Shown here: one piece after another, positions 8,262-53,975 of the stretch
How positions within the stretch are numbered: the first letter of the stretch is position 1
Layout of the letters: each line of letters opens with the position of its first letter
Source of the DNA: Ginglymostoma cirratum
Lineage: Eukaryota
NCBI GenBank assembly: GCA_024137785.1
Contig: JAHRHZ010000002.1
Span: forward strand, 19,115,760 to 19,173,640
Direction of reading: 5' to 3'
DNA length: 57,881 bases
Notes under the pieces: model-generated
The model's input: only the letters and a program-made list of their open reading frames with translations
What the model was told of the DNA's origin: nothing
Databases searched by the model: none
Program-made: the position numbers and the translations under genes

Positions 8262-8316
8262 ATGAATTTGTGTTCTATCGCTGCCTTGGCCCTAATGTCT
8301 TTCCTCTTGACCGCAG
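8262..8316 (+). CDS. Gene A exon 1, signal peptide [18 protein letters not shown](G)
   Basis: Kozak-like gtggccATG, hydrophobic leader, phase-1 donor CAG|gtaaga; joins to GVHS, an Ig-type leader ending, at the start of the V exon. Confidence 0.88.
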
Positions 8317-11300
8317 GTAAGATTTTGTAAAGTACCTGTGCATTGCTGCGGAGGAGTGGGAAGTTAATGGCAAGGGTGGGAGTGTGGCGTTGGTGAGAAA
8401 TGATAGGGACAGAGGTACTGTTACACGATTTACTGAGTTCCAAACTCCCGGAGCCTGTGCTTTAGGGTCTCCAATCGTTTCGGGAACACTCGGAACCATC
8501 AGAGTTAACGTCTGGAGTCCGGTAACCCTTCACTCAGAACTGCTTATTTTTTTAGAGAAGAACAGTTGGACAGACAAAGGATTTGATAACCATCTGGCTA
8601 GGAGGGCGAACAGCTTTTAATAGTGGCGAACAATAGGTAGTGTGTAATGGCAGGCTATATGATAACGAGGCCTGGTGTATGGGGTAGGGGGCTAGGACAT
8701 GGGAGAGCTCAGGCCCTAAAAATATTGAACTCCGCATTGAGTCTGGAGGGCTGCCGGGTCCCCAAGCAGAAAATGAGGTGTTATTCTTCCAGCTTGCGTT
8801 GGGCTTTCCTGGAACACTGCAGAAAACCAGAGAGAGATGTTGGCCAGGGAACAGGATGGTGTGTTAAAGTGACAAACAACTGGAAGCTCAGTGTCTTTGT
8901 TGCCAGCAGAACATAGATGTTCTGCGAAACGGTCACCCAGTCTACAGCTTCCTTCCCCCAGAGTAGAGGAGTCCACATTGTGAGCAGTGAATAGATTGTG
9001 GAAAGTGCAGGTAAAGTGCTGCTTCACCTGGAAGGTATGTTTAGGCTCTTGGATAGTGGGGAGGGAGGAGGTAAACGGGCAAGCGTTATATCTTTTGCGG
9101 TTGTTGGGGAAAGTGTAGTGGGGGCTGTCGGGGTGAGGTGTTGGGAGTGAAGGAAGAGTGGACCAGGGTGTCCCGGAGGGAAACGTCCTTGTGGAAGGCG
9201 GACAAGAGTGTGGAAGGGAATATATGTCTGGTGGTGGTATCTCACCGTAGGTGTGGAAATGGCGGCTGATGATCTTCTGGATGTGGATGCTCGTGCTGTT
9301 CCTAGGAAGGGTCAGTGGGCCCGAAATGTTAATTCTGACTGTTTTCTTCACAGTTGCTGCCAGACCTGCTGAGCTTTTCCAGCAACATATGTTTTTGTTC
9401 CTTATTTACAGCATCCGCAGTTCTTTCGGTTTTTATCACCAATGGCACTAGCCCGGCATATTGGCAGGGGTTTGTGGGAGTTGGATCTGGTGATGCTCGT
9501 CATGGCCAACACCAAGATCCCCCTTGTCAGGTGTGAGAGCTGTGGCCCTCATATTTCCAGGTCCAGGACCCTCCACCACCAGTCCTCTCCCACCCCTATC
9601 CTCTAAACTAAAGCTCCGTTCAAACTCTGACTCCCTCATTAACCTCAAGAAAACCAACAGCGTGTAACGCCTAACAGGAGGAACAGACGGTGTTCCAGGC
9701 AGAGAGAAAAGGGCTGAGGCGTGGGGAAGGGGGTGTGGGAAGAAGGGGAGGTGTTAGTGAAACATTCCCCTTTCGAATCGAGAAAGGGAGTTAAGGCATG
9801 GATAAAGGAGGAGGCGTGTTCAGTAACCCAAATCTAACCTTGAGCTAACTCAAGAGGGGTGAATGGTGTGAGGGTGGGGGTTAGGTGGGTGGGGGGAGCG
9901 TGAGGTGTGTTCAGTGGGTGCTCCAAGCACGAATAAGCGAGCGATGGCTGAAGCAACGTTTTATTCCTGATAGGAGTTCACTCAAATAAAGGAGCCGTGG
10001 TGCAGTCGCCTCTTTCAGCGGATCTGGTAGAAGGCGAGGCCGTGACTCTGGAGTGCAACATTGATAGCCCCGGACCCAAAACTTACAAATGGCTGAAAAA
10101 TGATCTTCCAATACCTCAAGCCATCCCAATGTACGCCGAGAGAGTAACTGGAAATTCACCAACGTCTGATAATCCATTGTTGATTAATTTGCGGATCAGG
10201 AACCTCACAGAATGCGATTCTGGGACATATTATTGTGTCATGGAGAAACTCGGCAACCAGTTTAAGGGCGGAGGGACGAAACTTGGAGTCAGGCGTAAGA
10301 GATTTCTGCAACTTTGTGTGTATGTGTGTGTGTTACTACATATCGGCGTGCGTGTACGTCTGGATATGTCTGAGTGTGTGTGTGTGCGCGCAGATATCTG
10401 TGTGAATGCAGGAGAGAGTTTAACCTTTTGTATCTCTCTGTGTGAGACTGTCCACACGCGGGTGAATTGTCTCGTGAGTGCGTGCCTGTGAAGGTATATC
10501 TGTGATACATGTTGGTCCTCAGACTGACATACATACGCCTCAGTGGCTCAGTATCCCTTGGAGAATGGGAGTCCGACCATGGGGGAGTGTGTATTTGAGT
10601 GCATATACATGATATTGTACGTCTCTGTGTGAATGTCCATGCATACATGCGTCTGGTGTGCCTCTGCGAGTATGTATTCGTGACTTTTGTGATTACGTCT
10701 TTTGCAGCCTGTGAGAACAGGCTTGTGAGAGTATGTTTGTGTGTCCCTGTGACTGCGTGTACGTCCGCGACTGTTGCAGAAAATCGGCGTCAATACATTA
10801 AGAAAGTCCATTGCTGAGATCCCCGTCGTTGAATGTGAAACAGCAAGTACTCAGAGAGAATTGGCATCCATTTGCTGAGGAACCGACCCTTGTCAAACTT
10901 TTGTTCCCGTTACCATTTTAGGTGTTTCACAAGAAAAGCACTGCCCCCCCAATATCGTACATATCGCAGCGGCTGCAGCAGTGGTATTGGTTCTTTGCAC
11001 TGCACTGACCGTAGTGTCTGTACTACTCAGGCAACGAAGTAAAGGTACTTCATTTGTTCAATCTATTGTTCATACTGCGGCGGACACCGTCTTACCGAAA
11101 CTTTAAACACACGCCTTTCAACCTGTAGGGTCCTCATTATTTCCAGCCGAAATTTTCTGCTTTTCAGCTCATCTTATTTCCCCGGATTTCAAAACTAATG
11201 CGTTCCACCTCATTTAGCCTCCTGTTCTTTGTGAAGTTCTCCTGTCAATTTATAATTGCGGCTGTGCTATTTACCCCGCGCTCCCTCTCCTGCGCACATC

Positions 11301-14300
11301 ATGCACCGGCCTGACTTTGGCGTCTCCTGTCGCCACTGGGTATTTATCTTTGTACAGCCCCAGCTAACAGCACCGCAAGAGCCCACATTATCAAGGCTAA
11401 CTGGAGCGATTCACGTACACAGACCCGCTATCCCGTTTCCAAAGTCAACACGGTACAAGCGATAAACATCGGTTGCCAGACGCACGCACACGCCAAGAAG
11501 GAATAAAAAAATTTTTTTTTATAACCAGGAACATAGATATTTTCTAATCAATCTGTTCCGGATTTTTTTTACCGTTACAACTTGATTTTACTTCCTTTTC
11601 CTGCGCTCGTCAAATTACTTTCCTTGCAGGAGGATGCGGTTATATTTTAGCTGAAACCAACTCATCGACCCTTCCTGGAAAATCTTGTGTTTTGAGCCAG
11701 TGCGCCCCCCCTTTTCACTTTTTTTAAAATCAGAAATGCTGAAACCAGGCCACCCATGACCACCTAGAAATCCAGCTGTAAATTCTAATGCTAGCATCAA
11801 AAGCTACTTGATGCCCAGGTCAATGAGCTCCTGGATTCCAAAGCCAAAGTTTCCCATGTTGCAGAAGTTACCGTTCTTCCCTTCATTTAACCGAACCTTT
11901 CGACTTTTGACTAGAATTTTGTCAACTTTGAGCTCCTCGGATTGGGAAATGAAAAGCAATCTTCTCATTTCTTCTAATACAAAATGATCACAACGGCATA
12001 GCTAGCTTTAGAAAGTGCAGATGTGACTTGAAGTTCCCAGGGACATTACCACGGTGCAACGAGGTCCCTTAGAGTGGGCCATATAGCATATTTACCCATC
12101 AGTGTGGGTGTAGAATGTATACCAGCATACCACAGAACTCAAACGCATTATAACTGGAGCAAGTGGGACTCAAACGCGTGTCTTCTAGCTCAGATGTAGG
12201 GATGCCACCATCGTGCCACCAGAGGTCTATGCGTGTAGATGTAGAGTGCAGACATCGCCAATCATGTTTCGGAGACAAGTCTGATAGTGACAATTTTACG
12301 CAGTCGCAGCAAAGTGAAAGACACTTTAATCCCTGTCATGAAGTTTTTGATTATTTTTGTGAATTGGGAGGAACCACGGAATTGGGGCGAGTCGTGTCTC
12401 AGCGGGAGTGCAGTGACAATCTTGCCACTCTATCATGTGTTCACATCTATTGGTGAGTTAATCATAAGTATATATGGCTAGGACTGAAACTGCGATTCAA
12501 TTACTCATCTTGTATTCAGATTAAATCAGTTTGTGACTTTTTTTTGTTCTTTGCAGCCTGCATTGCTCTTCAGAGGTGAGTTCATACTCTACTTTCGTTT
12601 ACTCTAGTCCCCTGCTTTCTCTCTGATCTGTAAGTGAACCATCTCTCTTGGTCCCCATGCTCTGATTCCTACCTCCATTGAAGTGCAAACTTATCGCATT
12701 GCCGAATACATTTGTTAATCGTGTGTTTTCATCTCCCACAGGCAGTTTGTTGCATACATCACTGAAAAGTCAGCAGGTAACTGATTTCTAACTTGCAGAA
12801 AGGAACTTGACAGGTCATAAATCGATGTGAGTGAAACGTCCCTTCGGCCCATTCTCGCTCACCATCCCAGGGTATTTTACCGTCTTATATACATAAGCAA
12901 CCTATCCTTAGGACACGTGACTTTGTCTCAGTATGCGCGTTGGATTTTAATACAACTAAATGGTTACAATTTTAAGCGGGATAAAGGAATATGGAGACCT
13001 GCAGGTTTCACATCTCTGAGGGTAACAAGGAGAAATTGATGAATGTTCAGAAGTTTACCTGAAGCTTGAATTTATCTTCAATTTGACTTAATTAACCCAG
13101 ATATGAACCTCTCTCGGTGAATACTGTCTCCATTATATGATTGGAATATTTCTATGCTTTTAGCTGTCGAATCTGTTACAATAACTTCCAAATCTTATCG
13201 ATCCACTTCTGCGTCATTTTGTACACATCTCATCCTTCCCCTCGCAAGCTGTGTATCTAGTTTCTCTTTAGCTGCCTTTTAATCCCCTCGATATCAATAA
13301 ATTTATTCATTCCCCCTTCTCCCAACACTCCCACTACTTTAATACACATCCTATATTTGCTCACGTAGTTTACAAAGGAATTCCGTTCAAAATCCACTGA
13401 CTTCATGCGGACCGATCTTCTCTAGACCTTTGTTCTTAAAATTCGGGTCAGACACACTATTCCAACCAATTAAATCCATAAAGAGAATCTATCTTCACCA
13501 GTAGAGAGATCATAGAGTCCCAGAGTTATATGGCTGGAAATAGACCCTTCGGCCCAACTCATCCATGCTGACCAGATATCCTAAATTAATCTAGTCCCAT
13601 TTGCCAGCATTTGGCCCACATTCCTTTAAACCCTTCCTATTCATGTACACATCCAGATGTCTTTTAAATGTTGTAATTGTTCCAGCCTCCACCACTTCCT
13701 CTGGCAGCCCATTCCATACACGCACCAACCTCTGGGTAAAAACGTCGCCCCTCAGGTCCCTTTTAAATCTTTCCCCTCTCACCTTAAACCTATGCCCTCT
13801 AGTTTTGGACTCCCCTAGCCTGGGGAAAAAACGTTGGTTATTCACCCTATCCATGCCCTTCATGATTTTATAAACCTCTATAGGTCACCTCTCATCCTCC
13901 GACGCTCCAGGGAAAATAGCCCCTGCTTATTCAGCCTGCCCCTACAGCTGAAACCCTGTAATCCTGGCGTGAACGAGAGGCCGTTACACTCCTCACATCT
14001 GCGGCAAACAGAAGACACAGATCTCAGGCAAATGAATTGGGCCGAGCTGAAGAGATTTTTGTTGAACTGTAGCTAATGGTATGACCTGGACTGTAGAGTA
14101 TGAAAGGATGATTGGAGCAGACTCAATAGTAATGCACAGAAAGGGAATGAATATATAAACTATAAAACTAGGATTAGTATTTTTTTTCTTTTGGTCTGTA
14201 GGTTATTAAGTACTATCAAACCAAGGAGATAAATGAATTTGGGTGCAGATGAGATGACATGTCAGTCTTGAGGAGCAGAATGGCCATTTCCTGTTCCCAC

Positions 14301-17300
14301 ATTCAAAAAATGCACAGCAGCATCTGAGAGCGAGGATAACTCTTTCTTTTAAAATCGAATCACGGAGGGGTTACATTGGAAATATTTATCGGATTGTTAG
14401 ATGCAGTGGAGAAACGCTGTAATTTCTGCATTTCTCCCCATTTTTATGCATTGTAAATTTAAATTTCAATAAGCAAAAACTATGCAGAGAAAATTAGATG
14501 CCCTACAGGTACACTATGATCATTGTGTCCAAAAATAAAAGTCAATTTGCAGAACATTCAGGATCAATCTTAAAGCAATCCCATATTTGCGTTTACATGT
14601 CTAGTAATGTGTACAAATTTATCTAGATTCAAACGCTACTCCTGTTTACAACAATGTCAGTTATGAGTAAGAAAACAAAAATACCTTACATTGTGCTACT
14701 TGGCCATAAATGGCATCACATTTCCAAAATTCCAGTAATTAATACTGTTCTAAATATATTTGTAAATATGAAAGATGTAGTAATTAATGAATTTCATTTG
14801 AATTTAGCCATACATGTTAACAGATTAGGTTAGGTAAATAAATGGATGTGTTGTTACATTTATGACTTTCTGTTTTGCATATATATGTTTTGCTAACTCA
14901 CTGTTATTTCTTTCCAATAGAGTCTGTCCCACCAAAACAGAAAGGGAAGCACACTGTAAGTAGGATCTTGAAAATTCCACCAATAAAATGTCACGGGTGC
15001 ATTGGAACAGAAGTTGGCCATTCAGACTGAATCTGCTCTGCCATTCCATACGATCATGGCCAATCAAACACTTCAATGCCTTTTACCCACCCCATTCATA
15101 TAACCCTGCAAAACCACTGGTAATGAGGAAGCTACAAACCTCGACCTTAAACACATCCACAATGCCAGAACTTTCATAGCCCCACGTGGTAGTGAATTGC
15201 AAAGGTTCACAGATCTCTGAGGAAGAAATAATTCTCAACATTTTGGACCAAATTTGCAATCTTCTTAATAATAAAATGTACCCTCTCATTCTAGATTCTC
15301 CAGCCATAGGAAGGATCTTTCTTGTATCTGCCTTGTCTATCTATTTGAGTATGTTATCAGATTTAATAAAATCCCCTTTCATTATTCAAAACTCTAAAGA
15401 ATACAAGCCAGTTTGCTCAATCTGTCCTCATAGAACAGTCCCACAATCCCAGCAACAGTACACCAGGTGCAGTCTAACCAAGCTCCTATGCAACTGAAGC
15501 AAGATTTCTCCTGTACTCAAATCCTCTTGCCATTAAGGATACATTCCAATAAGCTTCCTAATAGATTGCTGCACCTATATATTAGCTTTCAGTCATTTAT
15601 CAACAAAGACACCTCTAAGACCCTTTGCATATCTACACTTTCCAACCTCTTACTATTTTGGAAGAACCCTGAACATTAGTTCCTCCTACCAAAGTGAATA
15701 ACTTCACATTATATTGCCACATTCTTGTATATTCACAAAGTCTGTCCAAATCCTCCTGAAGCTGCTTCACATCTACCTCACCACATATAGTTCCATCTAG
15801 CTTTGTGCATTTTGCAAATTTGGAAATATTTGGATCGCCCACTCAATTTCATTGATAGATTTTGTGAACCGCTAGTGTCCAAGTACTAATTGTTGTGATG
15901 CCCTCTAGTCACAGACTGCCAATGTGTGAAACTCCCAATCATTCCTACTCTCTGTTTTCTATCTGCTTACTAATTATTAAGCCTGCGCAGGACAAATCAA
16001 AAATCTTCTGAAATTCAAAAGACTATCAAAAGCCGTCTGAAAGTCTAAGTACACCTTCTTCATCAGCTCTTTTATTAATCAATGTTTTTATTAACATCTT
16101 CAAAAACCTCCAACAATTTCGGCAAACGTGATTTTCCTATTTGCAAATCCATGCTACACCCAATCAGATCGTTATTATCCAAGTGTCTATTTATCACATT
16201 CTTTTTAATTGATTCTAGCTCTTTCTCTACTATTGGTGTAAGGCAAACGGGCCTTAGTTCCTTGTTTTCTCTCTGACTCCTTTTAAATAATGGCATGACA
16301 TCTGCTAACTTCCAAACAACAGAAATCTTTCCAGAATCTATTTAATTTTGGAAGACAATCATCAATGCACAATAGCCACCATTGTAAATCTCTGGGATGC
16401 ACAATATCAAGTTCCGGGATTTATCAACTTCCAGGCCCATTAATTTCTCCAACACAATCGTCTTACTAATGCTAATTTCCTTTAGCTCCTCATTCTCCAT
16501 AGCCATTTGGACTTCTAGCTCTAGGAGATTTTTTGTATGTTCCCCGGTGAAAACAGACACAAAATAACCATTTAGCTTCTCTGCAGTTTCTCTAGTTCCC
16601 ATCATAAATTGTCATGACTGCCTGTAAGGACCCACATTAACGCGTCTATAGTAACATTTTCGGCCCTTTTTTTGAAGTTGTTAGATTGCATTCATATTTT
16701 ATTCTCCCTTGTCATATCTGTCTCTTGGACCTGTAAAAAGCTTCCTATCCTCATACTTACGTATATTTCTGACAACTTTTTAGGCCTTTTCTTTTAACCT
16801 TATACAGTCCAGTACTTCCTTTGTTAACCATGTTTGACAGATCCTTTTTGCAATTTTCTATCGTGAAGAAGGTATATTTGTCCAAAGTCATGTGTTAATT
16901 CTTTAAATACCGTCCTTTGCCTATGTGCAGTTGTGAATTTGAATATGATTGTTCAATCCACCTCAGCCCCTTTGTGTCTCATGCTTTAATAACTTCCTTT
17001 ATTCAAATTTAACACCCTTGTTTCAGATTGAACTACTTCACTTTCAAACATTATGTAAAATTCAATCATATTATGCTCATTCATCCCTTAGGTTTGTTAC
17101 AACAAGATTAACTATCGCCTTTACATTACATAATACTGATTCTAAAACTCTGTTTCCTTTGATTAACATCTTTCAAGACGCTTGAAATAATTTGTCCCAA
17201 TTTACTGTATCAAAATCCTCCAAGATTTTGAATAGTTTTATTACATTGTTCCTTCAAATGTTTTGCTTTAAGGAAAATAGCACTAGCTATCCTTCGTAAC

Positions 17301-18584
17301 TGAAATCCCGCCTTTCTGATGTCATTTCCCCACATATCCTTTCAAAAGGCTAGACAGTTTTCATCCCATCTCGATGCAGAATCACAGAATCCCTACAGTG
17401 TGGAAGCAGACCATTCAGCCCATCGACCCCATACTGACCCTCCAAGGAGCATCTCACCCAGGCTCACTTCCCCATCCTATCCCTGCATTCCCCATCCCTG
17501 AACACTATTGGTAATTTAGCACGACCAATATACCTAGCCTACACAGGTTTTGACTTTGAGAGGAAGCCCACGTAGATACAAGGAGAACGTGCAAAATCCA
17601 CACAGACGGTCGCCCGGGGAGTGGACTCGAACCTAGGTCACTACTGCTGTGAGGAGGCGCTGCTAACAACGGATCCACCATGTCCCGCCCATAATTTTAT
17701 TAAAAAGTAAAACAGCATCCAAGTGACCAACTTAAAGGATTTCAAATTTTCAAATTTTACTCCAACAAGCTAAAAGAAACATTGATTCTCTCTGCAGTTA
17801 TCTTTCAAACGACTGAGCAGAATTCCCCCTTTTATTTTTAATACAACAAAAAATCCCTCACTTTATTTTCTCTGTTAAATAGACATTCAATTCTTTCGGA
17901 ACCAGTCCAACAGCGTTTTCCGCTCCTAAAAACATTCGTTTTCATTGACATCCTGGAAACATTTTTCAATGTGTAAGTTCAGTTCCCTGAAAATGCTCCC
18001 TCCAGCTCAAGCTGGGTGTATCTTCCAGTCTCGCTTATATCTTCACAAATTTGGCATTTTAAAACTGAGCAGAAATATTCACCATAGTTTTGTCTGGTGG
18101 ACCATGGATGTGCAGTCTCTACCTTTCGATCTCACATCCATTCAGCCTGCCCACTCTTGTGAAGTTTAATTATTTTTTAAGAGGAAAAAAATCCCCGTTG
18201 TGTTGAAACTACCTGTCGAGTGGGGTTTTCTGGATATTGCTCCCTAAGTCCTTAATCATGCCAAAGAGAATTGGGGAGAAGGGCGAAAAGGCAGGAAAGT
18301 GGAGTTGAGCATTATTAATTCAGGCACGATCTCATTCGTGGGGTGTGGGCATCACTGTCAAGGCTAGCATTCTGTTGCGCGTCTCTACTTGCCCTTGAGC
18401 CGAGCGATTTGTAAACAATTCATCTGACCGTTCACTGTGTACGTGTTTCTTAAAGCACCGAGAGGGAAAAACTTCGAGCTCCGGTCAAGAAGGGAAGAAG
18501 AAGAAAAGGAAGCCCAAAGAACACCACAGTGTGGAGAATGCGGACTACGTCCATTGTGGGCGAAACCAGGACATGCGGACCTAA
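8262..18584 (+). CDS. Gene A: single VJ-type IgV-domain type I transmembrane receptor (NKp30/CD28-superfamily-like), 7 coding exons, 238 aa. join(8262..8316,9974..10294,10922..11044,12557..12575,12742..12776,14921..14955,18456..18584)
   Basis: All junctions are GT-AG and phase-consistent (1,1,1,2,1,0); total 717 nt ending in TAA. Protein: [23 protein letters not shown] [19 protein letters not shown]([25 protein letters not shown])[77 protein letters not shown]. Confidence 0.85.
8716..9290 (-). mobile_element. Penelope-like retroelement relic (GIY-YIG endonuclease C-terminal region) in gene A intron 1
   Basis: TFPxNRxRxNxCPFTSS...[10 protein letters not shown]...GE...[10 protein letters not shown]...LPVVCHFN and, in another frame, RKLEE: typical vertebrate Penelope endonuclease; frameshifted. 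Confidence 0.85.
9300..9435 (+). mobile_element. Family B Penelope-type terminal repeat abutting the GIY-YIG relic
   Basis: ggaagggtcagtgggcccgaaatgttaa...ccagacctgctgagcttttccagcaac...cagcatccgcagttctttcggttttta, shared with the copies at 19450, 41580 and 52440. Confidence 0.7.
9974..10294 (+). CDS. Gene A exon 2, IgV domain with joined J-like G strand
   Basis: VVQSP...GEAVTLEC...YKW...[16 protein letters not shown]...[10 protein letters not shown]; acceptor ttattcctgatag, donor C|gtaaga. Confidence 0.95.
10315..10765. repeat. Degenerate (GT)n-rich low-complexity tract after gene A V exon
   Basis: interrupted TG dinucleotide runs. Confidence 0.7.
10922..11044 (+). CDS. Gene A exon 3, stalk plus transmembrane segment
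   Basis: acceptor ccattttag; encodes [40 protein letters not shown]; donor AAG|gtactt. Confidence 0.9.
12557..12575 (+). CDS. Gene A exon 4, 19-nt cytoplasmic micro-exon (ACIALQR)
   Basis: long polypyrimidine acceptor ...tctttgcag, donor AG|gtgagt; mirrors the 19-nt exon of gene B. Confidence 0.82.
12742..12776 (+). CDS. Gene A exon 5, cytoplasmic ([11 protein letters not shown])
   Basis: acceptor ttttcatctcccacag, donor CAG|gtaact, phase 2 to 1 keeps the frame open. Confidence 0.8.
13507..13968 (-). mobile_element. CR1-type LINE 3' fragment
   Basis: [21 protein letters not shown]...[23 protein letters not shown]. Confidence 0.9.
14921..14955 (+). CDS. Gene A exon 6, cytoplasmic ([12 protein letters not shown])
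   Basis: branch-point-like ctaac, acceptor tttctttccaatag, donor |gtaagt, phase 1 to 0. Confidence 0.78.
15000..17100 (-). mobile_element. Degenerate CR1-type LINE in gene A intron 6
   Basis: [34 protein letters not shown] remnants. Confidence 0.8.
17378..17690 (-). mobile_element. HE1-like SINE
   Basis: agaatccctacagtgtggaagcag...ctgtgaggaggcgctgctaac. Confidence 0.8.
18456..18584 (+). CDS. Gene A exon 7, terminal cytoplasmic exon ([42 protein letters not shown])
   Basis: acceptor gtttcttaaag, phase-0 open frame in non-repetitive sequence, receptor-tail-like ENADY motif, TAA at 18582-18584. Confidence 0.65.
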   Translation, partial: HREGKTSSSGQEGKKKKRKPKEHHSVENADYVHCGRNQDMRT

Positions 18585-19451
18585 ATGCAACGGCAGAGTC
18601 AATGTACCACCAAGGCTCCAGCAAACATTATTTAAGATCCTCGGCCATACCACAGTTACGTTCCTGAAAGCTAGAGATGATTTTCTTTTTCTGTGTTGTT
18701 TTAATATTTCGCCTGATTAGTATTACATCAATAATGAATAGACAATTTCACGCTCTATACCAAGAATACAATCCCCCCACCCCGCAAACAGTGACAATTG
18801 CAATTTTAAATTCATAGTTTACACTGTGTGGGATGTTGTACAGTGAAATAGTTGCAAGTGAAAATGAATTTATTATTTTGATTTCGACATGAAGAATAAT
18901 TGACCGGATGCAAGACGTCTCTGCTCCCCATCCCTCTCCCCACACGCTACCCAAAGTTCATATTTCCCCGAACCTATGCACTCCGATCACTATCAGTCCG
19001 CATTGCCTTCAGTAGAGATCAGAATCAGGCTGTATCCGATTCCATCAGCCCCTTTAAAGGGCGTATTCGGTTAAAGTTACCCAGGAATTTGGCGGGCAAG
19101 CCTCTACCGACTACTGATCCTTCAGTTCGCTGCTGTTTTCAGGGGTACATGCACGCCCACTTTCTGGAACGTCGAGAGAGAGGCAATGGATAAGAGTCAG
19201 TCTTCCCCAACTACACCCCCCGCCGCCGCCCCCACAGCCCTCGCCTGAGCTCTTAAGCCATTTCCGACTCAGCGAGCCTGGAGTTCCCAACCAACAAATC
19301 CAACTTTACGAGCTAACCCCCGCCCCACAACCCTCGTGGAAGATCACCTGACCAAGTACCAATTGGAGTACTCCTTTTACAGGTCAGACTGTGGGAGTCA
19401 GTTGGGATGACGAGGCAGGGAGGAAAGTTCTGGTCATCTCATCTCATCTCA

Positions 19452-19735: not shown

Positions 19736-21379
19736 CATCTCATCTCATATTCAGCTATCTCAGGCGTTCTGCCAAGTCAGTTGGGAGATAACGAATGGGA
19801 CCTTGTGAAATAAAGTGTGTCTCGATTGTTGAATTCTGCAGAATATTTTGTTTCATTTTAACAGCCACAAATGCAAATTTGAATAAAGCACCTTGGAGTG
19901 CGAAACGTTAGCAGTTAGCAATTTTATGTCGCCACTGTTTATGTGTTGGCGTGAATTGCCTCATGCCATTCTGACGGAAGTGTTTGGCTTATTTTTTGAC
20001 ACAACCTTTAAAGAGCAGCAAGCTGCTATTTCGATATGGAATTATTAAGCTGCCAGCGCCCAGCATTGCCTGCCGCAGTTCCGGTCTCTCAATGCAGGGC
20101 GATGAGGGACACAGGAGCACATTATGTATATATTCTGCCTGGTATATTATCTCTACAGAAATAGGGGATTCAGCCCTGTTGGGGTCCCATCCATGCTACT
20201 GCCTCATGGGCCTCTGCACTCCCCACCCCCAATTAGCTAAACATGTCCCTCCTTTGGCTTGAACTGAATTGTTTGCTGGGCTATTCCAGAGGGTAGATGA
20301 AGGTGAATCACGTTGATACTTGTTTAGATCCGCATGCAGGCCAGGTCAGATAAGGATGGCATATTTCCCTTGCAACTAGATGGGTTTGTACAGCTGATGA
20401 TAGGTTAAGCGCGCAATCCCAGATTTTTAAGTGGAATTTAAATTCCACCAGGTAATACATACAGAGAGATCTCACCCCCTGTAACATTAGACCGGCCTCT
20501 GAGTTACTACACCACTGACATTGCCATTGTACCTATACCTGTTCGTCCTCTTTGTATATCCTTTATCCTCTGTACTTGACTTCTTTTGAAAAAGAAAGTA
20601 ACTCCAGGTTATTTGGCTCAACTCCCCACTGAACGCAAAATTTAGGCATGAGAAAGGGCAAGACTGCCGTCTAAGACTGTTTCAAAACTGTTTGCTCACG
20701 GTAATGATTAGGTAGTACAAATTGAGTAAAGTACACAAAAGTAATTTTTAAGTGGATATTCTGTAACCGCGCCGGGACGTTGCATAAATAATCTGTTGAA
20801 GCTCGCGCCTATTGAACAGTGTGTGGGTGCAGAGAAACGAACGTGTATGTTTTGGAGGGGGAAGCTGCTGCTCAGATTTCTGCGCTATTTGGTCTGCAAA
20901 GACTCTCCTGTTTTGACTCTTTGCAGACCATTCCTGCTGCAGTTGCAGCCATGCCGGGCTTTTTGCGCAATCTTTGACATTTCTGAGGTCAGCGTTTTCT
21001 GGGTGAAATGATCAACGGAAACTCTGACTCGCGGGCCTCTGCCGATACTTTTTGACGAGGCTGTTGCTAGTGTCCCTTTTGTTAGCGGGGCGTATGGTCA
21101 GAGGCACACCGTCAGAGGCACACGGCTCATCTCAGACTCTGCGCAATGTTGCGAAACGTCCGGCTCAAGCCCTGGCTAGAGGGCAGGGGAAGTGGAAGGG
21201 TGCGAGCGTGGGGAGGAGGGGAGGTGTTGGACGGAATGGTGATGTGGTTAGTGGGTGTATTTTGTTTTGCTCGAGTCGGACCGGATGCCATTTATATATC
21301 AAATAAAAATTCTCCAAGGAGAAGCGATTAGCGAGTACCTGGACAGCAGGGCGATCATTGCGTGCAGTACAGTGCAGAA

Positions 21380-21556: not shown

Positions 21557-21647
21557 AGGATTCGACAAAAGTAATTCGAGGGACACTCTTATACAGGATG
21601 GGGTGAGGGTTGGAATATAACGCGCATGTCGAGAACCATCCTGTATT

Positions 21648-27160: not shown

Positions 27161-27209
27161 AAATAACGGAAAGTTATCACAGACAGGGTCCTATTTGCTG
27201 ATTTATCAC

Positions 27210-28340: not shown

Positions 28341-28925
28341 TAGAGATATTAGGTACTGCAGATGCTGGAGAATCCGAGATAACAAGGTGTGGAGCTGGAT
28401 GAACACAGCAGGCCAAGCAGCATCANNNNNNNNNNNNNNNNNNNNNNNNNNNNNNNNNNNNNNNNNNNNNNNNNNNNNNNNNNNNNNNNNNNNNNNNNNN
28501 NNNNNNNNNNNNNNNNNNNNNNNNNNNNNNNNNNNNNNNNNNNNNNNNNNNNNNNNNNNNNNNNNNNNNNNNNNNNNNNNNNNNNNNNNNNNNNNNNNNN
28601 NNNNNNNNNNNNNNNNNNNNNNNNNNNNNNNNNNNNNNNNNNNNNNNNNNNNNNNNNNNNNNNNNNNNNNNNNNNNNNNNNNNNNNNNNNNNNNNNNNNN
28701 NNNNNNNNNNNNNNNNNNNNNNNNNNNNNNNNNNNNNNNNNNNNNNNNNNNNNNNNNNNNNNNNNNNNNNNNNNNNNNNNNNNNNNNNNNNNNNNNNNNN
28801 NNNNNNNNNNNNNNNNNNNNNNNNNCTTCATCAGAAAAGGGTCTAGGCCCGAAACGTCAAGCTTTCCTGCTCCTATGATGCTGCTTGGCCTGCTGTGTTC
28901 ATCCAGCTCCACACCTTGTTATCTT
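28341..28925. mobile_element. Family A inverted-repeat element spanning an assembly gap
   Basis: inverted arms on both sides of the N run; near-perfect 14-bp TSD aaaataatcatggt / aaaagaatcatggt. Confidence 0.75.
28426..28825. other. Assembly gap (400 N)
   Basis: N run. Confidence 1.
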
Positions 28926-30289
28926 AAAAGAATCATGGTGTCCAGTATCAGAGGGAAATTCTCTTGAGGAAAATCATTGGCACCATGCATGTGTCTTTGT
29001 TGTGTAATACTCTGTCCACCTCTCAGCCTCCATTTAGTTTTCTTTTAGTCAGTCATTTCACATTTGATTTTTATCTATCCCTTTCCAAACTGAAAGCTGG
29101 CCACTGAGAGAGTAAACCAGAGGCCCAGTTTCATGCTTGAGCCCATTGGTTTCAATTCTCATCATGGCAAATTGCGGAATTCAGATTCAAATTTGGCTCA
29201 TAACTCTGGAATGAGAAGCTAGTAATGGTGGCTATGCAACTGTCATGGATTGTCATAAATATACAAATGGTTCTTTAATATGCTTTAGGGAAAGTCATCT
29301 GCTGTCTTTACTGTCTATGGCGTATATCTGATTTAATGCACTCAGCCATGTGGTTGATTCTTAAGTGTCCTCTGAAATGACCCAGTTTAATAGATATTAG
29401 GGATGCTCAGTGATGTCCATATCTCATAAACAGATACAAAATACTTAAACATAATTTAATTATGATAACCATTGCCTAGATGTTCTGTCACTGAAATAGA
29501 CTTCTTTTCAATCAACATCATTCTATAGAATTATGCACAGTATTACTTTATTTCATGCTAGGCTGAAAATGTATTAATCAAGAGTATTTTCCTGTGCCCA
29601 TTTTAGAAATCATCCAGTGTCATCATCCTTAACCCTGTACTTTGCCATTGATAGAGCATGGTAGCATGTTGGTTCCAACAAGGATACCAACTCTCAGGTG
29701 TGGAATAGCAATCCAGAGATTTAAGCAAAGAGTAATGAGGCAAATAGTACTATGACATTTGGGAACTTTGAATCCAGTGAATGATCTAAAAAATGGAATT
29801 AAATACTTAGTAATGAAAAGAAACGTTAAAATGAAATTACAGTATTGTCACTAGATCCTATCAGGTTCACTAATGTTATTTAGGGAAGTACATTTTTACA
29901 TCATCTTTCCTGATCTATATGGGTCTTCAGACCCACAGTATTATTGACACTTCAGTATCCTTTCGAATTACAAGGCTGAGTCAGCTGCAATCATTCTTAG
30001 TTAGAAGTGCCAAAGGGATAATTCACCTGACTGCTCCTAGATGCGCTACACAAGCTAGTCTCCAGCAAGCCTGATTATTTCAACTTGATAGCAAGAAGCA
30101 GTTGAATGCGTTGGATACTGTCCTAGTAATATTCCTGGAAGTCTGCGCTCCAGAACTATACTTGTCTCAAGTCTAGCTGTTCCATCACAGCTACACGTTG
30201 GCATTTATTTGACTACGGCAACATTGACTAGGCATAGCCTGACTATTAAAAGTGTAACAGATCCAATCTGGCCTACAACTGTTCAATTG

Positions 30290-35792: not shown

Positions 35793-38770
35793 ACAACAAA
35801 GAACAAAGGAAATTACAGCACAGGAACAGGCCCTTCGGCCCTCCAAGCCTGCACCAACATGCTGCCCATCACAACTAAAATCCCTACCCTTTCAACAACC
35901 GTATTCTTCTAATACCATCCTATTCATGCATTTGTCAGACGTCCTTTAAAAGTCACGATTGTACCTGCTTCCATTACCTCTCCCAGCAGCGAGTTCTAGG
36001 CACTCACCACCCTCTGTTTAAAAATCTTGCCTTGTACATCACCTTTAAACCTTGACCCTCGTGCCTTAAACCTATGCCCCCTAGTAGCTGACTCTTTCAT
36101 CCTGGGAAAAAAGTTTCTGACTGTCCACTCCGTCCATGCCCGTTATTATCTTGTAGACCTCTGACAGGTTGCCTCTCAACCTCTGTCGTTTCGGTGAGAA
36201 CAACCCAAGTTTCACCAACCTCTCCAATGTCCTCCATACCACGCAACATCCTGGTAAGTCTTTTCTGTACCTTCTCCCAAGCCATCACATCATTCTGGTA
36301 TTGTGGTGACCAGAATTGAACACAATATTCCAAATGCAGCCGAACTGAGGTTCTATAAAGTTGCAACATTACCCGCGAATTTTTAAACTCAATGCTCCAG
36401 CCAATGAAGACAAGCATGCCATATGCCATGTTGACTATCTTCTCCAACTGCATTGCCACTTTCGGTGACCTGTGTACCTGTACACACAGATTCCTCTGCT
36501 TATCAGTACTCTTAAGGGTTCTGCCATTTAATGTATATTTTCCATCCGTATTAGGCCTTCCAAAATGCATTACCTCACATTTTTCTGGATTAAACTCCCA
36601 ATCTGCCATCTCTCTGCCCAAGTCAACAACTGACCTATATCCTGCTGCATCCTCTGACAGTCCTCATTGCTATCCGCAAATCCACCAACCTTTGTGTCAT
36701 CTGCAAACTTATCAATCAGAGCAGTTCCATTTTCCTCCAAATCACTTATATATATTGCAAATAGCAAAGTCCCAACACTGATCCCCGAGAAATGCCACTA
36801 GAAACAGCCCTCCATTCAGAAACACACCATTCCACTGCAGCCCTCTGTCTTCAATGACCGAATCAGTTTTTTTTTATCCATCTTGCAAACTCATCTCTGA
36901 CTCTATGTGACTTTACCTTCTGCATCAGTCTGCCATAAGGGACTTTGTCAAAGACCTTACTGAAGTGCATGTAGACAATATCCACTGCCCTACCCTTATC
37001 ATCGATATTTTTCATCACTTTCTCAAAAAAACTCAATCAAGTTAGTGAGATGCGATGTCCCCTTCACAAAACCATGCTGCCTCGCATTAATACGCCCACT
37101 TATTTCCAAGTGTGAGTAAATCCTGTCTCCAAGAATCCTCTCCAAGAATTTCTGTACCACTGACATAAGTCTCACTGGCCTGTACTTAGCTGATTATCCC
37201 TGTCACCCTTCTTAAACAAAGGAACAACATTGGCTATTCTCCAATCCTCAGGAACCTCCCCTGTAGCCAGTGAGGAGACCAAGAGTCTTTTTGAGACCCC
37301 AGTAGTTTCAGCCCTTGCCTCTCTCGGTATTCTGGGGTATATCCCACCAGTCTCTGGGGACTTGTCTGCATCAATGTTTTTCAAGACACCCAATGCCTCC
37401 TCTGTTTTGATATCAACATGACCAAAACTATCCACATACCCTTCCACAGACTTATCATCCACCAAGTCCTTCTCTATGGTGAATACTGATGCAAAGTACG
37501 CATTTAATACCTCGCCCATTAAGTCTGGCTCCACAAATAAATTCCCTTCCCTGTCCTTGAGTGGGCCAACCTCTCCCTGACTACCCTCTTGCTCATTATA
37601 TATGTATAAAAAGCCTTGGGATTTTCCTTAATCCTGTTGGCCAATGACTTTTTAGCCCTCCTGACTCCTTGCTTAAGTTCCTTCTGACTTTCCTTGTATT
37701 CCAAACTTGCTTCGTGTGTTCCCAGCCTCCTAGCCTTGACAAATGCTTCCTTCTTCTTTTTGGCTAGGCTTCATCCTTATAGGAATGTACCATTCCTGAG
37801 TTCCCAGCAGCCTACACTTGAAAGCCTCCCACATACCAAATGTCGATTTGCCCTCAAACATCTGCCTCCAATCTACATTCTTTAGTTCCTGCCTAATATT
37901 GTTGTAATTAGCCTTTCCCAAATTTAGCACCTTCACTTGACAACTATACTGAATTGTGATCGCTGCTCCTGAGTTGTTCCTCTACTGAGACATCGACCAC
38001 CTGGCCAGGCTCAATCACCAATGCTAGGTCAAGTACGGCCCCTTTCCTAGCTGGACTATCTATATATTGTTTCAAGAAGCTCTCCTGGATGCTCCTTACA
38101 AACTCTGCCCCATCTGAGCCCCAAACACTAAGTGAGTCACGATCAATACATGGGAAGTTAAAATCACCCATGACAACAATTCTGTTACTTTTACGTCTTG
38201 CCAAAATCTACCTGCATATCTGTTCATCTATCTCCCGCTGGCTGTTGCGAGGCCTATAGTAAACACCAAACATTGTGATTGCACCTTTCCTGTTTCCAAG
38301 TTATACCCATATTGCCTCACTGTATGAGCCATCCGAGGTGTCCTCCCTCAGTACAGCTGTGACATTCTCCTTAACACAAGTAATGCAACGCCCCCACCCC
38401 TTTTACATCCCCCTCTATCCTGCCTGAAACATCCAAAGCCTGGAACGTTAAGCTGCCAGTCCTGTCCCTCCCTTAACCAACTCTCTTTAATAGCAACAAC
38501 ATTATAGTTCCAAGTACTAATTCAAGCTCTTAATTCATCTGCTTTACCTGTTACACTTCTCGCATTGAACAGATGCACTTCAGTCCACTAGACCCGCTTT
38601 GATCAGCAAACACACCCTGCCTACTCTTCCTCTGAGTTTTACTGGCTGTATTCTCTAGTTCCCTTTCAGTCAATTCACCTTTGCTTTGGTTCCCACCCCC
38701 TGCCAAGCCAGTTTAAATCCTCCTGAGTGACACCAGCAAACCTCGCAGCCAAAATATTGGTGCCCTTCCA
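35793..38770 (-). mobile_element. Long CR1/HER1-type LINE ORF2 relic (endonuclease to RT to 3' tail)
   Basis: VVMGDFNFP, VPEDWRIANVVPLFKKG, KFADDTKVGG, FNPEKCEVMHFG, LEYCVQFWSP in broken frames. Confidence 0.92.
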
Positions 38771-39112: not shown

Positions 39113-39127
39113 CGTAAGCTGCGCCTA

Positions 39128-51500: not shown

Positions 51501-53975
51501 GACTTCCGCAGTCGAGCTGCATAAAAAGGACTATCATCCAATTTGTACCCATCTGGTTTACCTCGCGTCCAGGAAACTGCACCAACTAGAATTGGGGTTC
51601 CTTCAATGTCCAAGGCGCAGTTCAGCGTGACCGATTCTCCCTCTGTTACAGTTATAAAGGGAGGGAACTGGAAGACAGTGACATTCATCTTCGTATCCAC
51701 TGGTAGAAAGAAAAGATTATTGGTTACAATTTTATTCATATTTTTGTGTATATATATAATATATATATAGATTAAACAAACAGGAGGTGTTAGCAGTTTA
51801 AGATACATTACATGCCTGCCGAAAGTGCATGAAACCTTCACCATATAAGATAGGGTCTGAACCACGAAGTCAGATGAACGTTTTATTGTGCTACTCCTTT
51901 TCACTGCCTTGTGATCTGAACCAAGAGTTCAAACCCTAAAAGGCAATTGCTAAAGCAATGTCGAGATCCTCTATCGCTCAACATTTTACTTTTTGATTAT
52001 TAATTGCTTTCTATTAATGTGGGGCAACATTGAGCCTTCGTTGCTGGGGTTTCCTTAAACTTAAAGAAATTGCAGCAACATTTGCAAGGTGGGGCAAAAG
52101 TGAAGGGAGTTCTGTGCCGACCTGGCAACAGGGAAACTCCGATTAATTTACTTGTTTGATTCTACTCATATCGACTATATGAAATCGCGTGTAATCTGCA
52201 AACTAGAAACAAATTTAGCCCGTAGAAGTTCGTTGAACATATGTGCGAAAGGATGCTGTTGCACCCTAACTTCGTCGACTTTATTTTGAATAAGCTGTTC
52301 ATCTATTTAAGCCGAGCAGGTGATTGCGTTTCTGATAGCTGGCGAGACCTTCATCTTACATAGCGGTTATTATTGTACATCATACTGATACAGCACTTTC
52401 CAGGGCTCATAATCCGAGCACGACTGTTCCCTAACTACGTAAAAACCGAAGGAACTGCACATGCTGCAAATCAGGAATAGTGTCTGACGAAGGGTCACCG
52501 GACCCGAAACGTTGATTTTGAATTTTCTTCAAAGATGCAGCCAGACATGTTGAGCTTTTGTTCTGTTCTTACTCCCTTACTGTTGAAATGTCGAAGTGAG
52601 CTCTGAACTTCAAGGAAATCTACATCAAGTAACTAAAAAAATCACAAGACGCAGTGTGATTTGCAAAGAGGAATCAAGAGCGCGTTGTGATTTAGAGAGT
52701 AGAACAGATCGCGGGAGCAAGATAAGCGGAAGAAGCGCGAGGGTCAGATAAAAGGAAATGGATATTCAGAAGTCGGGAATAAAAATGACTACGTTCCATT
52801 GACGTAGGATCAAGGAAAGGATTCCATACGAGAAGCAGAAAGATGGAAGAAAAGGAAGTTTGTATAAGAAAGGGTGAAAATAAGGGAAGAAACAAAGTGG
52901 GGTGACTACCACAAGTAATGATGGTGGTATTGGGCTATACTGACAGTGTTGGCCGGGTGGTCGTCGTGTGAGGAGTTATAGGGTGGTGAAGTTTAGGGTT
53001 GATGATCACAAGGTGTAAGAAGAATAGCTTCGTCCGAGATAGGGAAGGCCCTTGTTCGAACGCAGATCCACCAGATTGCTGGAAAGATGTTGACTTTTCC
53101 TGATCATCTGGTCGACGATATAAGATCAGGAGGCTGACAGTATGGGGAGGTTCACGGACGATCGCACTGAGCTTTGGTTGAACCCACAGTTGCTCAGATA
53201 TTTAAGCAATCCCCAAGAAGCAAAATCTAGACAACACCCGGGTCTGGGCGAAAAATCCTGTAAACAATACAAATGTGAGCGACGCGTACGTCCCGTGAGC
53301 AAAATAAAAGCAAAGGATTACACCATAATAATTACACGTGTTTATGATTTTTTTGGAAAAAGAAAATAACTATAAATTTGTATAGCGTCCCTTCACATCC
53401 TTGAATTATACGAAATGCTTCAGAATTGAACCTTGCTTTTCAGTTATTGTTGAGAAATCTAACGTGGGCATCAAATCCTGTCAGCAGCGCCTCACTCGTC
53501 GGCTTCAATTCAGTTAAAAGGTTCGCCCCAAATTTCTAAAACCCTCCGCCGTAATTTCGATGCGAGATAGCTTGTGACACTTAGCTGCCGATCTCCCACC
53601 AAAATTCCGAGCAGGAGAGAGAGAGAAATCCTGGCAGAAACTGCACCTCTGTGAGTCCCAACATTGTATCCCAACTTAGGATAAAATTGCGGGAGTGATA
53701 CTATGTTTTATACCGCAGCCGTCTGTGAGTTGCAGGCGCTTGACGTTCACAAATTCGCTTCCGTTCGCATTTCTGTGGATATTTCAACCAGTCCAATTAC
53801 CCGTGGCAAGATGACAATCGCTTCTTAGAACACCCGTAGTTTCTGCAACATTTGCGACGCAAAATAATGTTTTTTTTTAATCCTCGATTTGGAACGGCAA
53901 AAATCAGTGGAACTCACCCGCGCTTGTTGCAAAGATAATCGACTGCATGAGGGTCAGCAGTTGTCGTAAAACCAT
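48502..53975 (-). CDS. NCR3: Gene B: NKp30/NCR3-like single VJ-type IgV receptor, first 6 exons (199 aa). complement(join(48502..48530,49385..49413,49510..49528,50219..50338,51358..51699,53918..53975)); terminal exon uncertain
   Basis: V domain motifs LVGAVSW and YYCRVSVMGREGRDGNGTKLEVK resemble, from memory, human NKp30 AIGSVTW and YVCRVEVLGLGVGTGNGTRLVVEK. Junctions are GT-AG with phases 1,1,1,2,1,0. The symbol indicates likely family, not proven orthology. Confidence 0.7.
48901..49192 (+). mobile_element. HE1-like SINE
   Basis: ggttagcactgct...ggttcgattccacc...acgctgtagggattcta. Confidence 0.85.
49385..49413 (-). CDS. Gene B exon 5 (DLGATNTTY)
   Basis: acceptor ttttgctttttatag, donor G|gtatgt, phase 2 to 1. 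Confidence 0.75.
49510..49528 (-). CDS. Gene B exon 4, 19-nt micro-exon (AILRLKR)
   Basis: acceptor tttattttccag, donor AG|gtacgg; same length and phase as gene A exon 4. Confidence 0.8.
50219..50338 (-). CDS. Gene B exon 3, stalk plus transmembrane (KEAEKNSGNNNSLLGLGGAVTLLVIIVMVLMFGLIQQNK)
   Basis: acceptor tccttatttcag, 23-residue uncharged hydrophobic stretch, donor AAG|gtttgc. Confidence 0.88.
50917..51120 (-). mobile_element. HE1-like SINE, 3' part
   Basis: catagaatccttacagtgtggaagtaggccattcggcccatcgag...ttgcacatct. Confidence 0.8.
51358..51699 (-). CDS. Gene B exon 2, IgV (VJ-type) domain
   Basis: VFQFPPFITVTEGESVTLNC...VSW...INISDLIEKDSDTYYC...GNGTKLEVK; acceptor ttctttctaccag, donor C|gtaagt. 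Confidence 0.95.
52440..52570. mobile_element. Family B element with hammerhead motif (52484-52513) in gene B intron 1
   Basis: CTGACGA-agggtcaccggaccc-GAAAcgtt. Confidence 0.75.
53918..53975 (-). CDS. Gene B exon 1, signal peptide MVLRQLLTLMQSIIFATSA(V)
   Basis: agcATGG start, hydrophobic leader, phase-1 donor G|gtgagt. Confidence 0.85.

What the first reader, a model, noticed from the sequence alone, without database searches (positions are those of the whole stretch)
8262..53975. Convergent pair of diverged germline-joined VJ-type receptors with identical exon architecture
Seen: two genes on opposite strands facing tail to tail. Each has a leader, a single VJ exon, a TM exon, a 19-nt micro-exon and two further short exons, with identical intron phases 1-1-1-2-1-0. 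Both TM exons end in K followed by a phase-1 G, and both micro-exons read A-x-x-x-L-x-R, yet the V domains are strongly diverged. Known: single-exon VJ receptors (NKp30, CD28 family, CD8, CD79) are relatives of antigen-receptor V domains, and NKp30 homologs exist in cartilaginous fish. Inference: an ancient inverted duplication produced a two-member shark receptor system, possibly co-expressed or functionally paired, which would be easy to mis-annotate because of the micro-exons.
Basis: partly seen in the sequence, partly recalled or inferred. Interest (0 to 1): 0.8.

Follow-up and report, generated by a model that had tools for sequence, protein, structure and literature searches.

The report
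Two known nurse shark NCR3 genes
The window holds two real, tail-to-tail nurse shark immune-receptor genes that share a seven-exon layout with a 19-base micro-exon, but both are already deposited as members of the published shark NKp30 (NCR3) gene family, so this is a correct reading of a known thing and not a new two-gene receptor system.

Summary
Two convergent genes are present, each with a leader, one VJ-type V exon, a TM exon ending in K plus a phase-1 G, a 19-nt micro-exon and two short exons. Intron phases are 1-1-1-2-1-0 in both, all splice sites are GT..AG, and each CDS is 717 nt (238 aa).

Both products are 100% identical to deposited nurse shark proteins named "natural cytotoxicity triggering receptor 3" (QTT61902.1 for the + gene, QTT61901.1 for the - gene). 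A 2025 paper lists eight nurse shark NCR3 records (MT914154-914161), and a 2021 paper is devoted to the family.

RNA reads and contigs confirm the gene 1 junctions. One assembly gap lies in intron 6 of the - gene and the other is intergenic, so no coding residue is missing.

The two proteins are 30% identical and colinear, so they are old paralogues. Each has orthologues in several elasmobranch orders.

"Two-member system" and "functionally paired" are not supported. This scan has already noted further NKp30-family genes on other stretches of the same genome, 67 kb and 137 kb away and 8-9 Mb away.

Only the - gene has a specifically NKp30-like V domain and a C-terminal ITIM. The + gene has a generic VJ domain and an invariant juxtamembrane motif.

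Verdict: already known, low interest.

The parts
8262..8316 (+). Gene 1 exon 1: leader, ends in phase 1
   Evidence: tblastn of P0010 residues 1-19, 100%; GT donor
9974..10294 (+). Gene 1 exon 2: single VJ-type V-set exon (J-like GGGTKLGV), phase 1 to 1
   Evidence: Pfam V-set E 7e-10; 100% to P0010; RNA joint 10294>10922
10922..11044 (+). Gene 1 exon 3: stalk with Cys (HCPPN), uncharged TM, ends ...RSK + G (phase 1)
   Evidence: sequence; hydrophobicity scan; RNA contigs X1 and X5 cover 10922-11042
12557..12575 (+). Gene 1 exon 4: 19-nt micro-exon, A-C-I-A-L-Q-(R), phase 1 to 2
   Evidence: unique pattern hit; P0010 167-173; the bin depth in X5 and X1 equals 19 nt at the depth of the spliced contig
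12742..12776 (+). Gene 1 exon 5: 35 nt, (R)[11 protein letters not shown], phase 2 to 1
   Evidence: sequence; RNA joint to 14921 in X11, X1 and X5
14921..14955 (+). Gene 1 exon 6: 35 nt, [12 protein letters not shown], phase 1 to 0
   Evidence: tblastn 100%; RNA joint
18456..18584 (+). Gene 1 exon 7: last coding exon with a polybasic run and ENADYVHCG, stop TAA at 18582-18584.
   Evidence: tblastn of P0010 197-238, 100%; sequence
53918..53975 (-). Gene 2 exon 1: leader, phase 1
   Evidence: tblastn of P0001 1-19, 100%
51358..51699 (-). Gene 2 exon 2: single VJ-type V exon (GNGTKLEV), NKp30-like
   Evidence: best PDB matches are human NKp30, E 1.4e-9, and with the family profile E 1e-10; 100% to P0001
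50219..50338 (-). Gene 2 exon 3: stalk without Cys, uncharged TM, ends ...QNK + G (phase 1)
   Evidence: sequence
49510..49528 (-). Gene 2 exon 4: 19-nt micro-exon, A-I-L-R-L-K-(R), phase 1 to 2
   Evidence: unique pattern hit; residues 174-179 of P0001
49385..49413 (-). Gene 2 exon 5: 29 nt, (R)DLGATNTTY, phase 2 to 1
   Evidence: sequence
48502..48530 (-). Gene 2 exon 6: 29 nt, AVPNLQRTTQ, phase 1 to 0
   Evidence: sequence
47325..47724 (.). Assembly gap inside intron 6 of gene 2, at the centre of a palindromic repeat copy
43589..43708 (-). Gene 2 exon 7: last coding exon ending ...HVEYATIY (ITIM-type V-x-Y-x-x-I), stop TGA at 43591-43589
   Evidence: tblastn of P0001 200-238, 100%; sequence
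28426..28825 (.). Assembly gap in the intergenic stretch between the two 3' ends, at the centre of another copy of the same palindromic repeat

Best explanation
These are two already deposited members of the nurse shark (Ginglymostoma cirratum) NCR3/NKp30 gene family, lying tail to tail about 25 kb apart. Each encodes a 238-aa type I membrane protein with a signal peptide, one non-rearranging VJ-type V domain, a short stalk, an uncharged TM helix and a cytoplasmic tail spliced from four small exons. The two are ancient paralogues that keep the same exon plan.

Gene 2 (- strand) is the NKp30-like one. Its V domain is closest to human NKp30 and its tail ends in V-E-Y-A-T-I. I infer that it signals by itself through phosphotyrosine recruitment of SH2 phosphatases (inhibitory type), not through an ITAM adaptor as mammalian NKp30 does.

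Gene 1 (+ strand) belongs to a slowly evolving lineage found across sharks and rays. It has a generic antigen-receptor-like V domain and a conserved stalk cysteine, from which I infer a disulfide-linked dimer. It also has an invariant juxtamembrane segment [18 protein letters not shown], half of it encoded by the micro-exon, plus a polybasic run and a conserved D/E-Y-V-H tyrosine. Its signalling mode is not known; I infer tyrosine-based and possibly palmitoyl-dependent signalling.
For: - Identity: P0001 (QTT61901.1) and P0010 (QTT61902.1), both named natural cytotoxicity triggering receptor 3 of Ginglymostoma cirratum, match the exons at 100%.
- Literature: PMC12227049 lists nurse shark NCR3 genes MT914154-914161. 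Kinlein et al. [quoted passage not shown]
- Exon plan and phases.
- RNA: joints 10294>10922 and 12776>14921 appear in polyA raw reads and in two sets of contigs. Bin depths fit inclusion of the 19-nt exon.
- Paralogy: 30% identity, E 2e-13, colinear.
- Gene 2 V domain: NKp30 gives the top four PDB hits.
- Gene 2 clade: support 100/99 across three shark orders.
- Gene 1 orthologues: the invariant [18 protein letters not shown] is found in 10 species, including sawfish and sevengill shark.
- TM helices are uncharged, and the VEYATI motif is present.
Against: - The gene 1 V domain is not specifically NKp30-like. NKp30 is absent from the top 60 PDB sequence hits, both for the single sequence and for the family profile. 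It ranks only 25th by fold, behind CD79b, VNAR, TCR and SIRP.
- Other species' annotations leave the gene 1 orthologues unnamed, or in one case call it SIRP-alpha-like.
- The -2 position of the gene 2 EYATI motif varies among sharks (V, T, A, D). A second ITIM tyrosine present in other sharks is N in nurse shark.
- No functional data were available. The 2021 family paper could not be read here.
Confidence: 0.9

Rival explanations
1. Gene 1 is not a true NKp30 relative. It is a separate, conserved elasmobranch VJ-receptor lineage, closer to SIRP, CD79b or antigen-receptor V domains. It merely sits in the NCR3 cluster and was named NCR3 by proximity and domain type.
For: PDB sequence searches with gene 1 alone and with its family profile put VNAR, CD79b, TCR alpha, IgL and SIRP first and do not list NKp30 in the top 60. 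The fold search is led by CD79b. NCBI auto-named the Mustelus orthologue SIRP-alpha-like. The gene 1 group is only weakly supported as one branch (28/92), and its link to gene 2 is unresolved in the V tree.
Against: Gene 1 has the same seven-exon plan as gene 2, with identical phases, a 19-nt micro-exon and the K+G junction. The colinear similarity to gene 2 extends beyond the V domain. The K-A-x-x-x-L-x-R junction is shared by three lineages of the family. The depositors named it NCR3.
Confidence: 0.2
2. The two genes form a functional pair, co-expressed as a heterodimer or as an activating/inhibitory couple. That would explain why the convergent arrangement is kept.
For: They are adjacent and share an architecture. 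Their orthologues lie on a contig of the same length, which I read as the same chromosome, in Scyliorhinus canicula and Mustelus asterias.
Against: Neither TM has a charged residue. Only gene 1 has a stalk cysteine. Neither tail has an ITAM. The family has many more members nearby. Co-expression was not tested, because only gene 1 was laid with reads.
Confidence: 0.05
3. The tail-to-tail orientation is a scaffolding artefact. The contig holding gene 1 (1-28425) may be joined in the wrong orientation at the 28426-28825 gap.
For: The two genes are separated by an N gap of estimated length, and no read evidence across it was obtained.
Against: Both sides of the gap belong to one palindromic repeat copy, with 49-nt arms that are 100% complementary. 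The second gap interrupts another copy of the same repeat at the same internal place. There the join is confirmed by gene 2 exons 6 and 7 lying in the right order and strand.
Confidence: 0.08

Closest known systems
Nurse shark NCR3 family (GenBank MT914154-914161; Kinlein et al. 2021, Immunogenetics 73:333)
   Same: The two products are letter-for-letter the deposited proteins QTT61901.1 and QTT61902.1.
   Different: Nothing differs in sequence. I could not read the paper, so I do not know whether it shows the exon coordinates, the convergent arrangement or the 19-nt micro-exon.
Human NKp30 (NCR3), PDB 3NOI, 3PV6, 6YJP
   Same: It has a single non-rearranging VJ-type V domain. The gene 2 V domain aligns over its whole length, including the G-N-G-T-x-L-x-V J-like strand.
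   Different: From my own knowledge, mammalian NKp30 has a TM arginine, pairs with CD3-zeta or FcR-gamma and has a short tail. The shark genes have uncharged TMs and long tails built from four exons. Gene 2 carries an ITIM-type motif. The gene 1 V domain is not specifically NKp30-like.
SIRP alpha/beta N-terminal V domain
   Same: It gives some of the best full-length V matches for gene 1 and the second-best group for gene 2. SIRP alpha also signals through tail ITIMs (my own knowledge).
   Different: SIRPs have two further C1 domains. The shark genes have one Ig domain only.
CD79b (Ig-beta)
   Same: It has one V-type domain, a stalk cysteine and a TM. It is the top fold hit and a strong profile hit for gene 1, covering V, stalk and TM.
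   Different: CD79b has an ITAM tail, and gene 1 has none. The E-values are no better than for many other V domains.
PD-1 ITSM (TEYATI)
   Same: The gene 2 lineage ends in an invariant E-Y-A-T-I. The bamboo shark orthologue reads T-E-Y-A-T-I. The PD-1 motif itself is from my own knowledge.
   Different: This is a short motif only. No V-domain or gene-structure link to PD-1 was seen.

Membership tests
NCR3 / NKp30 family | One non-rearranging V domain with the J-like G-x-G-T-x-L-x-V strand, encoded in a single exon | tested here: met
   Both genes meet it: GGGTKLGV in exon 9974-10294 and GNGTKLEV in exon 51699-51358. Pfam V-set matches at E about 7e-10.
NCR3 / NKp30 family | V domain closer to NKp30 than to other V-set families | tested here: inconclusive
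   Gene 2 meets it: NKp30 gives the top four PDB hits. Gene 1 does not: NKp30 is absent from the top 60 sequence hits and ranks 25th by fold.
NCR3 / NKp30 family | Identity with sequences deposited under that name for this species | tested here: met
   100% identity to QTT61901.1 and QTT61902.1.
NCR3 / NKp30 family | Linkage to the MHC | not tested
   Only unchecked scan notes place MHC class I genes 10-14 Mb away on the same assembly piece. The linkage claim is in the title and abstract of the 2021 paper as I recall them; the paper was not readable here.
NCR3 / NKp30 family | Binding of a B7H6-type ligand | not testable with these tools
   This needs a binding assay.
Mammalian-type activating NKp30 | Charged TM residue for pairing with an ITAM adaptor (CD3-zeta or FcR-gamma) | tested here: not met
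   The TM stretches [22 protein letters not shown] and LLGLGGAVTLLVIIVMVLMFGLI have no charged residue.
ITIM-bearing inhibitory IgSF receptors | Cytoplasmic (S/I/V/L)-x-Y-x-x-(I/V/L) | tested here: met
   This holds for gene 2 only: V-E-Y-A-T-I at the C-terminus. E-Y-A-T-I is invariant in the orthologues that reach the end. Gene 1 has V-A-Y-I-T-E and A-D-Y-V-H-C, which do not fit.

The most novel reading that the evidence does not exclude
The 19-nt micro-exon may work as a splice-controlled tail switch. It converts phase 1 to phase 2, so skipping it shifts the frame of the whole tail. In nurse shark gene 1 the shifted frame stays open through exons 5-7 and for roughly 40 codons into the 3' UTR. 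The basking shark RefSeq isoforms of the orthologue are exactly that reading. If those isoforms are real, elasmobranch NCR3-family genes would make alternative cytoplasmic tails from one gene, as human NKp30 a/b/c isoforms do. The invariant [18 protein letters not shown] module of the gene 1 lineage would then be present or absent by splicing.
Probability: 0.12. Interest if true: 0.45.

Novelty: already known. Interest (0 to 1): 0.18.

Why it matters
NKp30 is one of the few natural-killer-type receptors traceable from sharks to humans, and its unsplit VJ exon bears on how antigen receptors arose. This window gives exact exon coordinates for two deposited nurse shark family members. It shows that both use the same seven-exon plan with a 19-nt micro-exon, and that neither has the mammalian adaptor-pairing TM residue.

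Nothing here changes the published picture of a diverse shark NCR3 family. The practical value is for annotation. Gene models in other sharks and rays skip the micro-exon or the TM exon, and the widely conserved gene 1 lineage remains unnamed outside nurse shark.

Tried and rejected
Adjacency and orientation of the orthologues in whale, zebra, bamboo and cat sharks therefore could not be tested. Only 'contig of the same length' for both orthologues in S. canicula and Mustelus was seen.
- The 2021 family paper, the 2012 B7H6/NKp30 paper and the 2015 review are not held. What I say of their content is from titles in reference lists and from memory.
- The protein atlas search gave only generic single-V-set membrane proteins such as CD47-like, CD83 and TIGIT.
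- The fold search of the gene 1 model does not tell V-set families apart.
- Pfam found nothing in six intergenic or intronic ORFs.
- tblastn with all family proteins found no third V exon in the window. A weak hit at 20860-21054 (E 0.18) was dismissed.
- RNA run X12 laid no reads at all.
- The two junctions flanking the 19-nt exon were not listed as joints, because the exon is too short to be laid. Its inclusion rests on bin depths and on the deposited protein.
- I did not build or search a joined spliced sequence. Exons were searched one by one by reference, and split codons were read by eye.
Full report
**1. What is there**

The window has exactly two V-type exons. One is on the + strand at 9974-10294 and one on the - strand at 51699-51358. 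Both score as V-set domains and both end in a J-like strand, GGGTKLGV and GNGTKLEV, without any interruption.

- Downstream of each lies a hydrophobic exon, found by a hydropathy scan and read. Both end AAA G|GT.
- I searched for a 19-nt exon between AG and GT that would read A-x-x-x-L-x plus the first two bases of an Arg or Ser codon. This gave one site after each TM exon, 12557-12575 and 49528-49510, each behind a strong pyrimidine tract.
- Two further short exons follow in each gene: 35 + 35 nt in gene 1 and 29 + 29 nt in gene 2.

**2. Identity**

I searched each V exon by reference inside the stop-free ORF that contains it.

- The - gene returned a 238-aa protein at 100% identity: P0001, QTT61901.1, UniRef A0A8A9WRC0.
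- The + gene also returned a 238-aa protein: P0010, QTT61902.1, A0A8A9WR54.
- Both are named 'natural cytotoxicity triggering receptor 3 [Ginglymostoma cirratum]'. The window is therefore nurse shark.

tblastn of these two proteins on the window places every residue.

A script confirmed AG and GT at every boundary, phases 1,1,1,2,1,0 in both genes and a CDS of 717 nt in both. I read the split codons by eye and they give the residues of the deposited proteins. I did not build or search a joined spliced sequence.

**3. The gaps (the test asked for first)**

- Gap 47325-47724 lies in intron 6 of gene 2. Exon 6 ends at 48502 and exon 7 starts at 43708, on the same strand and in the right order. 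No residue of P0001 is missing, so the gap hides no coding sequence of this isoform. Only the intron length is uncertain.
- Gap 28426-28825 lies between the two stop codons (18584 and 43589) and is intergenic.
- Both gaps sit at the centre of copies of one palindromic repeat. The arms are 28377-28425/28876-28924 (100% complementary) and 47232-47281/47725-47774 (94%).
- The second join is validated by the gene structure. By analogy the first is probably right, but the convergent orientation formally depends on it.

**4. Transcript evidence**

I laid reads on 9900-15000 of gene 1, using runs found.

- The joint 10294>10922 and the joint 12776>14921 (listed at 12774>14919; the cut fits 2 nt further on) were seen. 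Both are GT..AG.
- They appear in raw polyA RNA reads (3 and 5 reads) and in contigs of two other runs.
- The joints on either side of the 19-nt exon are not listed, because the exon is too short to be laid.
- Bin 12465-12635 nevertheless fits inclusion. In X5 its depth is 1.33, which equals 19 nt of the spliced contig (depth 11.9) spread over 171 nt. In X1 it is 15.1, which equals an unspliced contig (9.87) plus 19 nt at depth 46.6.
- Together with the deposited protein this supports inclusion of the micro-exon.

**5. Relationship of the two genes**

- P0001 and P0010 align colinearly over 179 residues at 30% identity, E 2e-13, through V, TM, micro-exon and the next exons.
- The junction motif K-[A/V]-x-x-x-L-x-R occurs in three lineages: gene 1 type (KACIALQR), gene 2 type (K[A/V]ILRLxR) and a ray type (KAYALLVR). 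The micro-exon is therefore a family trait, not a peculiarity of this pair.
- Gene 2 orthologues are found in bamboo, bullhead, smooth-hound and cat sharks. They form a clade with 100/99 support.
- Gene 1 orthologues are found in whale, zebra, bamboo, white, basking, cat, smooth-hound and sevengill sharks, and in sawfish and skate.
- In the gene 1 lineage the V domains are only about 40-55% identical outside the carpet sharks, but the segment [18 protein letters not shown] is invariant or nearly so. That is independent support for orthology.
- In the V-only tree the gene 1 group is one side of a branch with weak support (28/92).
- The duplication therefore predates the split of the galeomorph orders, and very probably the split of sharks and rays.

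**6. What they resemble**

- For gene 2, human NKp30 is the best solved relative, with a single sequence (E 1.4e-9) and with the family profile (top four hits, E 1e-10).
- For gene 1 it is not. VNAR, CD79b, TCR alpha, light chains and SIRP lead, and NKp30 is absent from the top 60.
- A model of gene 1 has V-domain pLDDT of 83-91 and predicts one long helix through the TM and the conserved juxtamembrane segment. It matches CD79b first and NKp30 only at rank 25, all with similar E-values.
- Gene 1 is thus filed in the family on its deposited name, its exon plan and its colinear similarity to gene 2, not on its V domain.

**7. How they probably work**

Shown:
- Both are type I membrane proteins with an uncharged TM. 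They lack the TM arginine through which mammalian NKp30 pairs with ITAM adaptors (that feature of mammalian NKp30 is from my own knowledge).
- Gene 2 ends in V-E-Y-A-T-I, which fits the ITIM consensus. E-Y-A-T-I is invariant in its orthologues, while the -2 position varies.
- A second motif, (I/L/V)-x-Y-A-K-V, present in other sharks reads S-I-C-N-A-K-V in nurse shark.

Inferred:
- Gene 2 signals on its own through phosphotyrosine and SH2 phosphatases, that is, as an inhibitory type.
- Gene 1 has a conserved stalk cysteine, so it is a likely disulfide-linked dimer.
- Gene 1 also has a juxtamembrane cysteine that is a possible palmitoylation site, a polybasic run and a conserved [D/E]-Y-[V/I]-H tyrosine. 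None of its tyrosines fits ITIM, ITSM or ITAM, and its signalling mode is open.

**8.

- 'Two-member system' does not hold. PMC12227049 lists eight nurse shark NCR3 records. [quoted passage not shown] Unchecked notes of this scan place further NKp30-family genes 67 kb and 137 kb beyond the window and 8-9 Mb before it, with MHC class I genes 10-14 Mb before it on the same piece.
- 'Functionally paired' has no support. Only gene 1 has a stalk cysteine, and neither TM is charged.
- 'Easy to mis-annotate' is borne out. The basking shark models (P0020, P0167) and the skate model (P0023) leave the family consensus right after the TM-exon K+G. Translating nurse shark exons 5, 6 and 7 in the frame produced by skipping the 19-nt exon gives [22 protein letters not shown] and [12 protein letters not shown]...QTLFKILGH. 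This is colinear with the basking shark tail. Whether that is a real isoform or a model error is not known.
The only related observation is that gene 1 and gene 2 orthologues sit on a contig of the same length, which I read as the same chromosome, in S. canicula and in Mustelus asterias.

**9. Verdict**

The genes are already deposited and belong to a published family. Novelty: already known. Interest: low. The only loose thread worth a look is whether the micro-exon is skipped in real transcripts.

Noticed in passing
window 28342-28926 and 47232-47803: Both assembly gaps interrupt copies of the same palindromic repeat at the same internal place. The arms are 49-50 nt long and 94-100% complementary. 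A further copy of the arm core lies at about 3763. This hairpin-forming element seems to break the assembly.
   Followed up: partly
window 13491-14003 (intron 5 of gene 1): A very high-copy repeat is abundant in RNA data. Summed contig depth is in the tens of thousands and raw-read depth is about 60-80, with many variant letters and loose ends. The neighbouring exons have a depth of only a few reads.
   Followed up: no
P0020 and P0167 (Cetorhinus maximus), P0023 (Leucoraja erinacea); corresponds to window 12557-12575: The gene models of the gene 1 orthologue skip the 19-nt micro-exon, so the whole tail is read in a shifted frame. In nurse shark that shifted frame is also open through exons 5-7 and roughly 40 codons past the normal stop. 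This is either an annotation error or a real alternative tail.
   Followed up: partly
P0007 and P0009 (Scyliorhinus canicula isoform X2 models); corresponds to window 50219-50338: The models of the gene 2 orthologue join the V exon directly to the micro-exon and lack the TM exon, which is symmetric at phase 1 to 1. They predict a soluble form.
   Followed up: no
window 43664-43666 (- strand, exon 7 of gene 2): Nurse shark has AAT (Asn) where four other sharks have the tyrosine of an (I/L/V)-x-Y-A-K-V ITIM-type motif. Only the C-terminal VEYATI motif remains in this species.
   Followed up: partly
window 36887-36982 (- strand): A repeat-derived stretch here matches the N-terminus (residues 5-36) of the Chiloscyllium plagiosum model P0003 at 41% identity. 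By eye it looks like a reverse-transcriptase fragment, but Pfam found no family in the neighbouring ORFs. The extra N-terminus of that model is probably a transposon fragment fused by the annotation.
   Followed up: no
window 10310-10395: A (TG)n microsatellite lies just after the V-exon donor of gene 1. RNA reads show length variants there, which suggests some unspliced or read-through transcripts.
   Followed up: no
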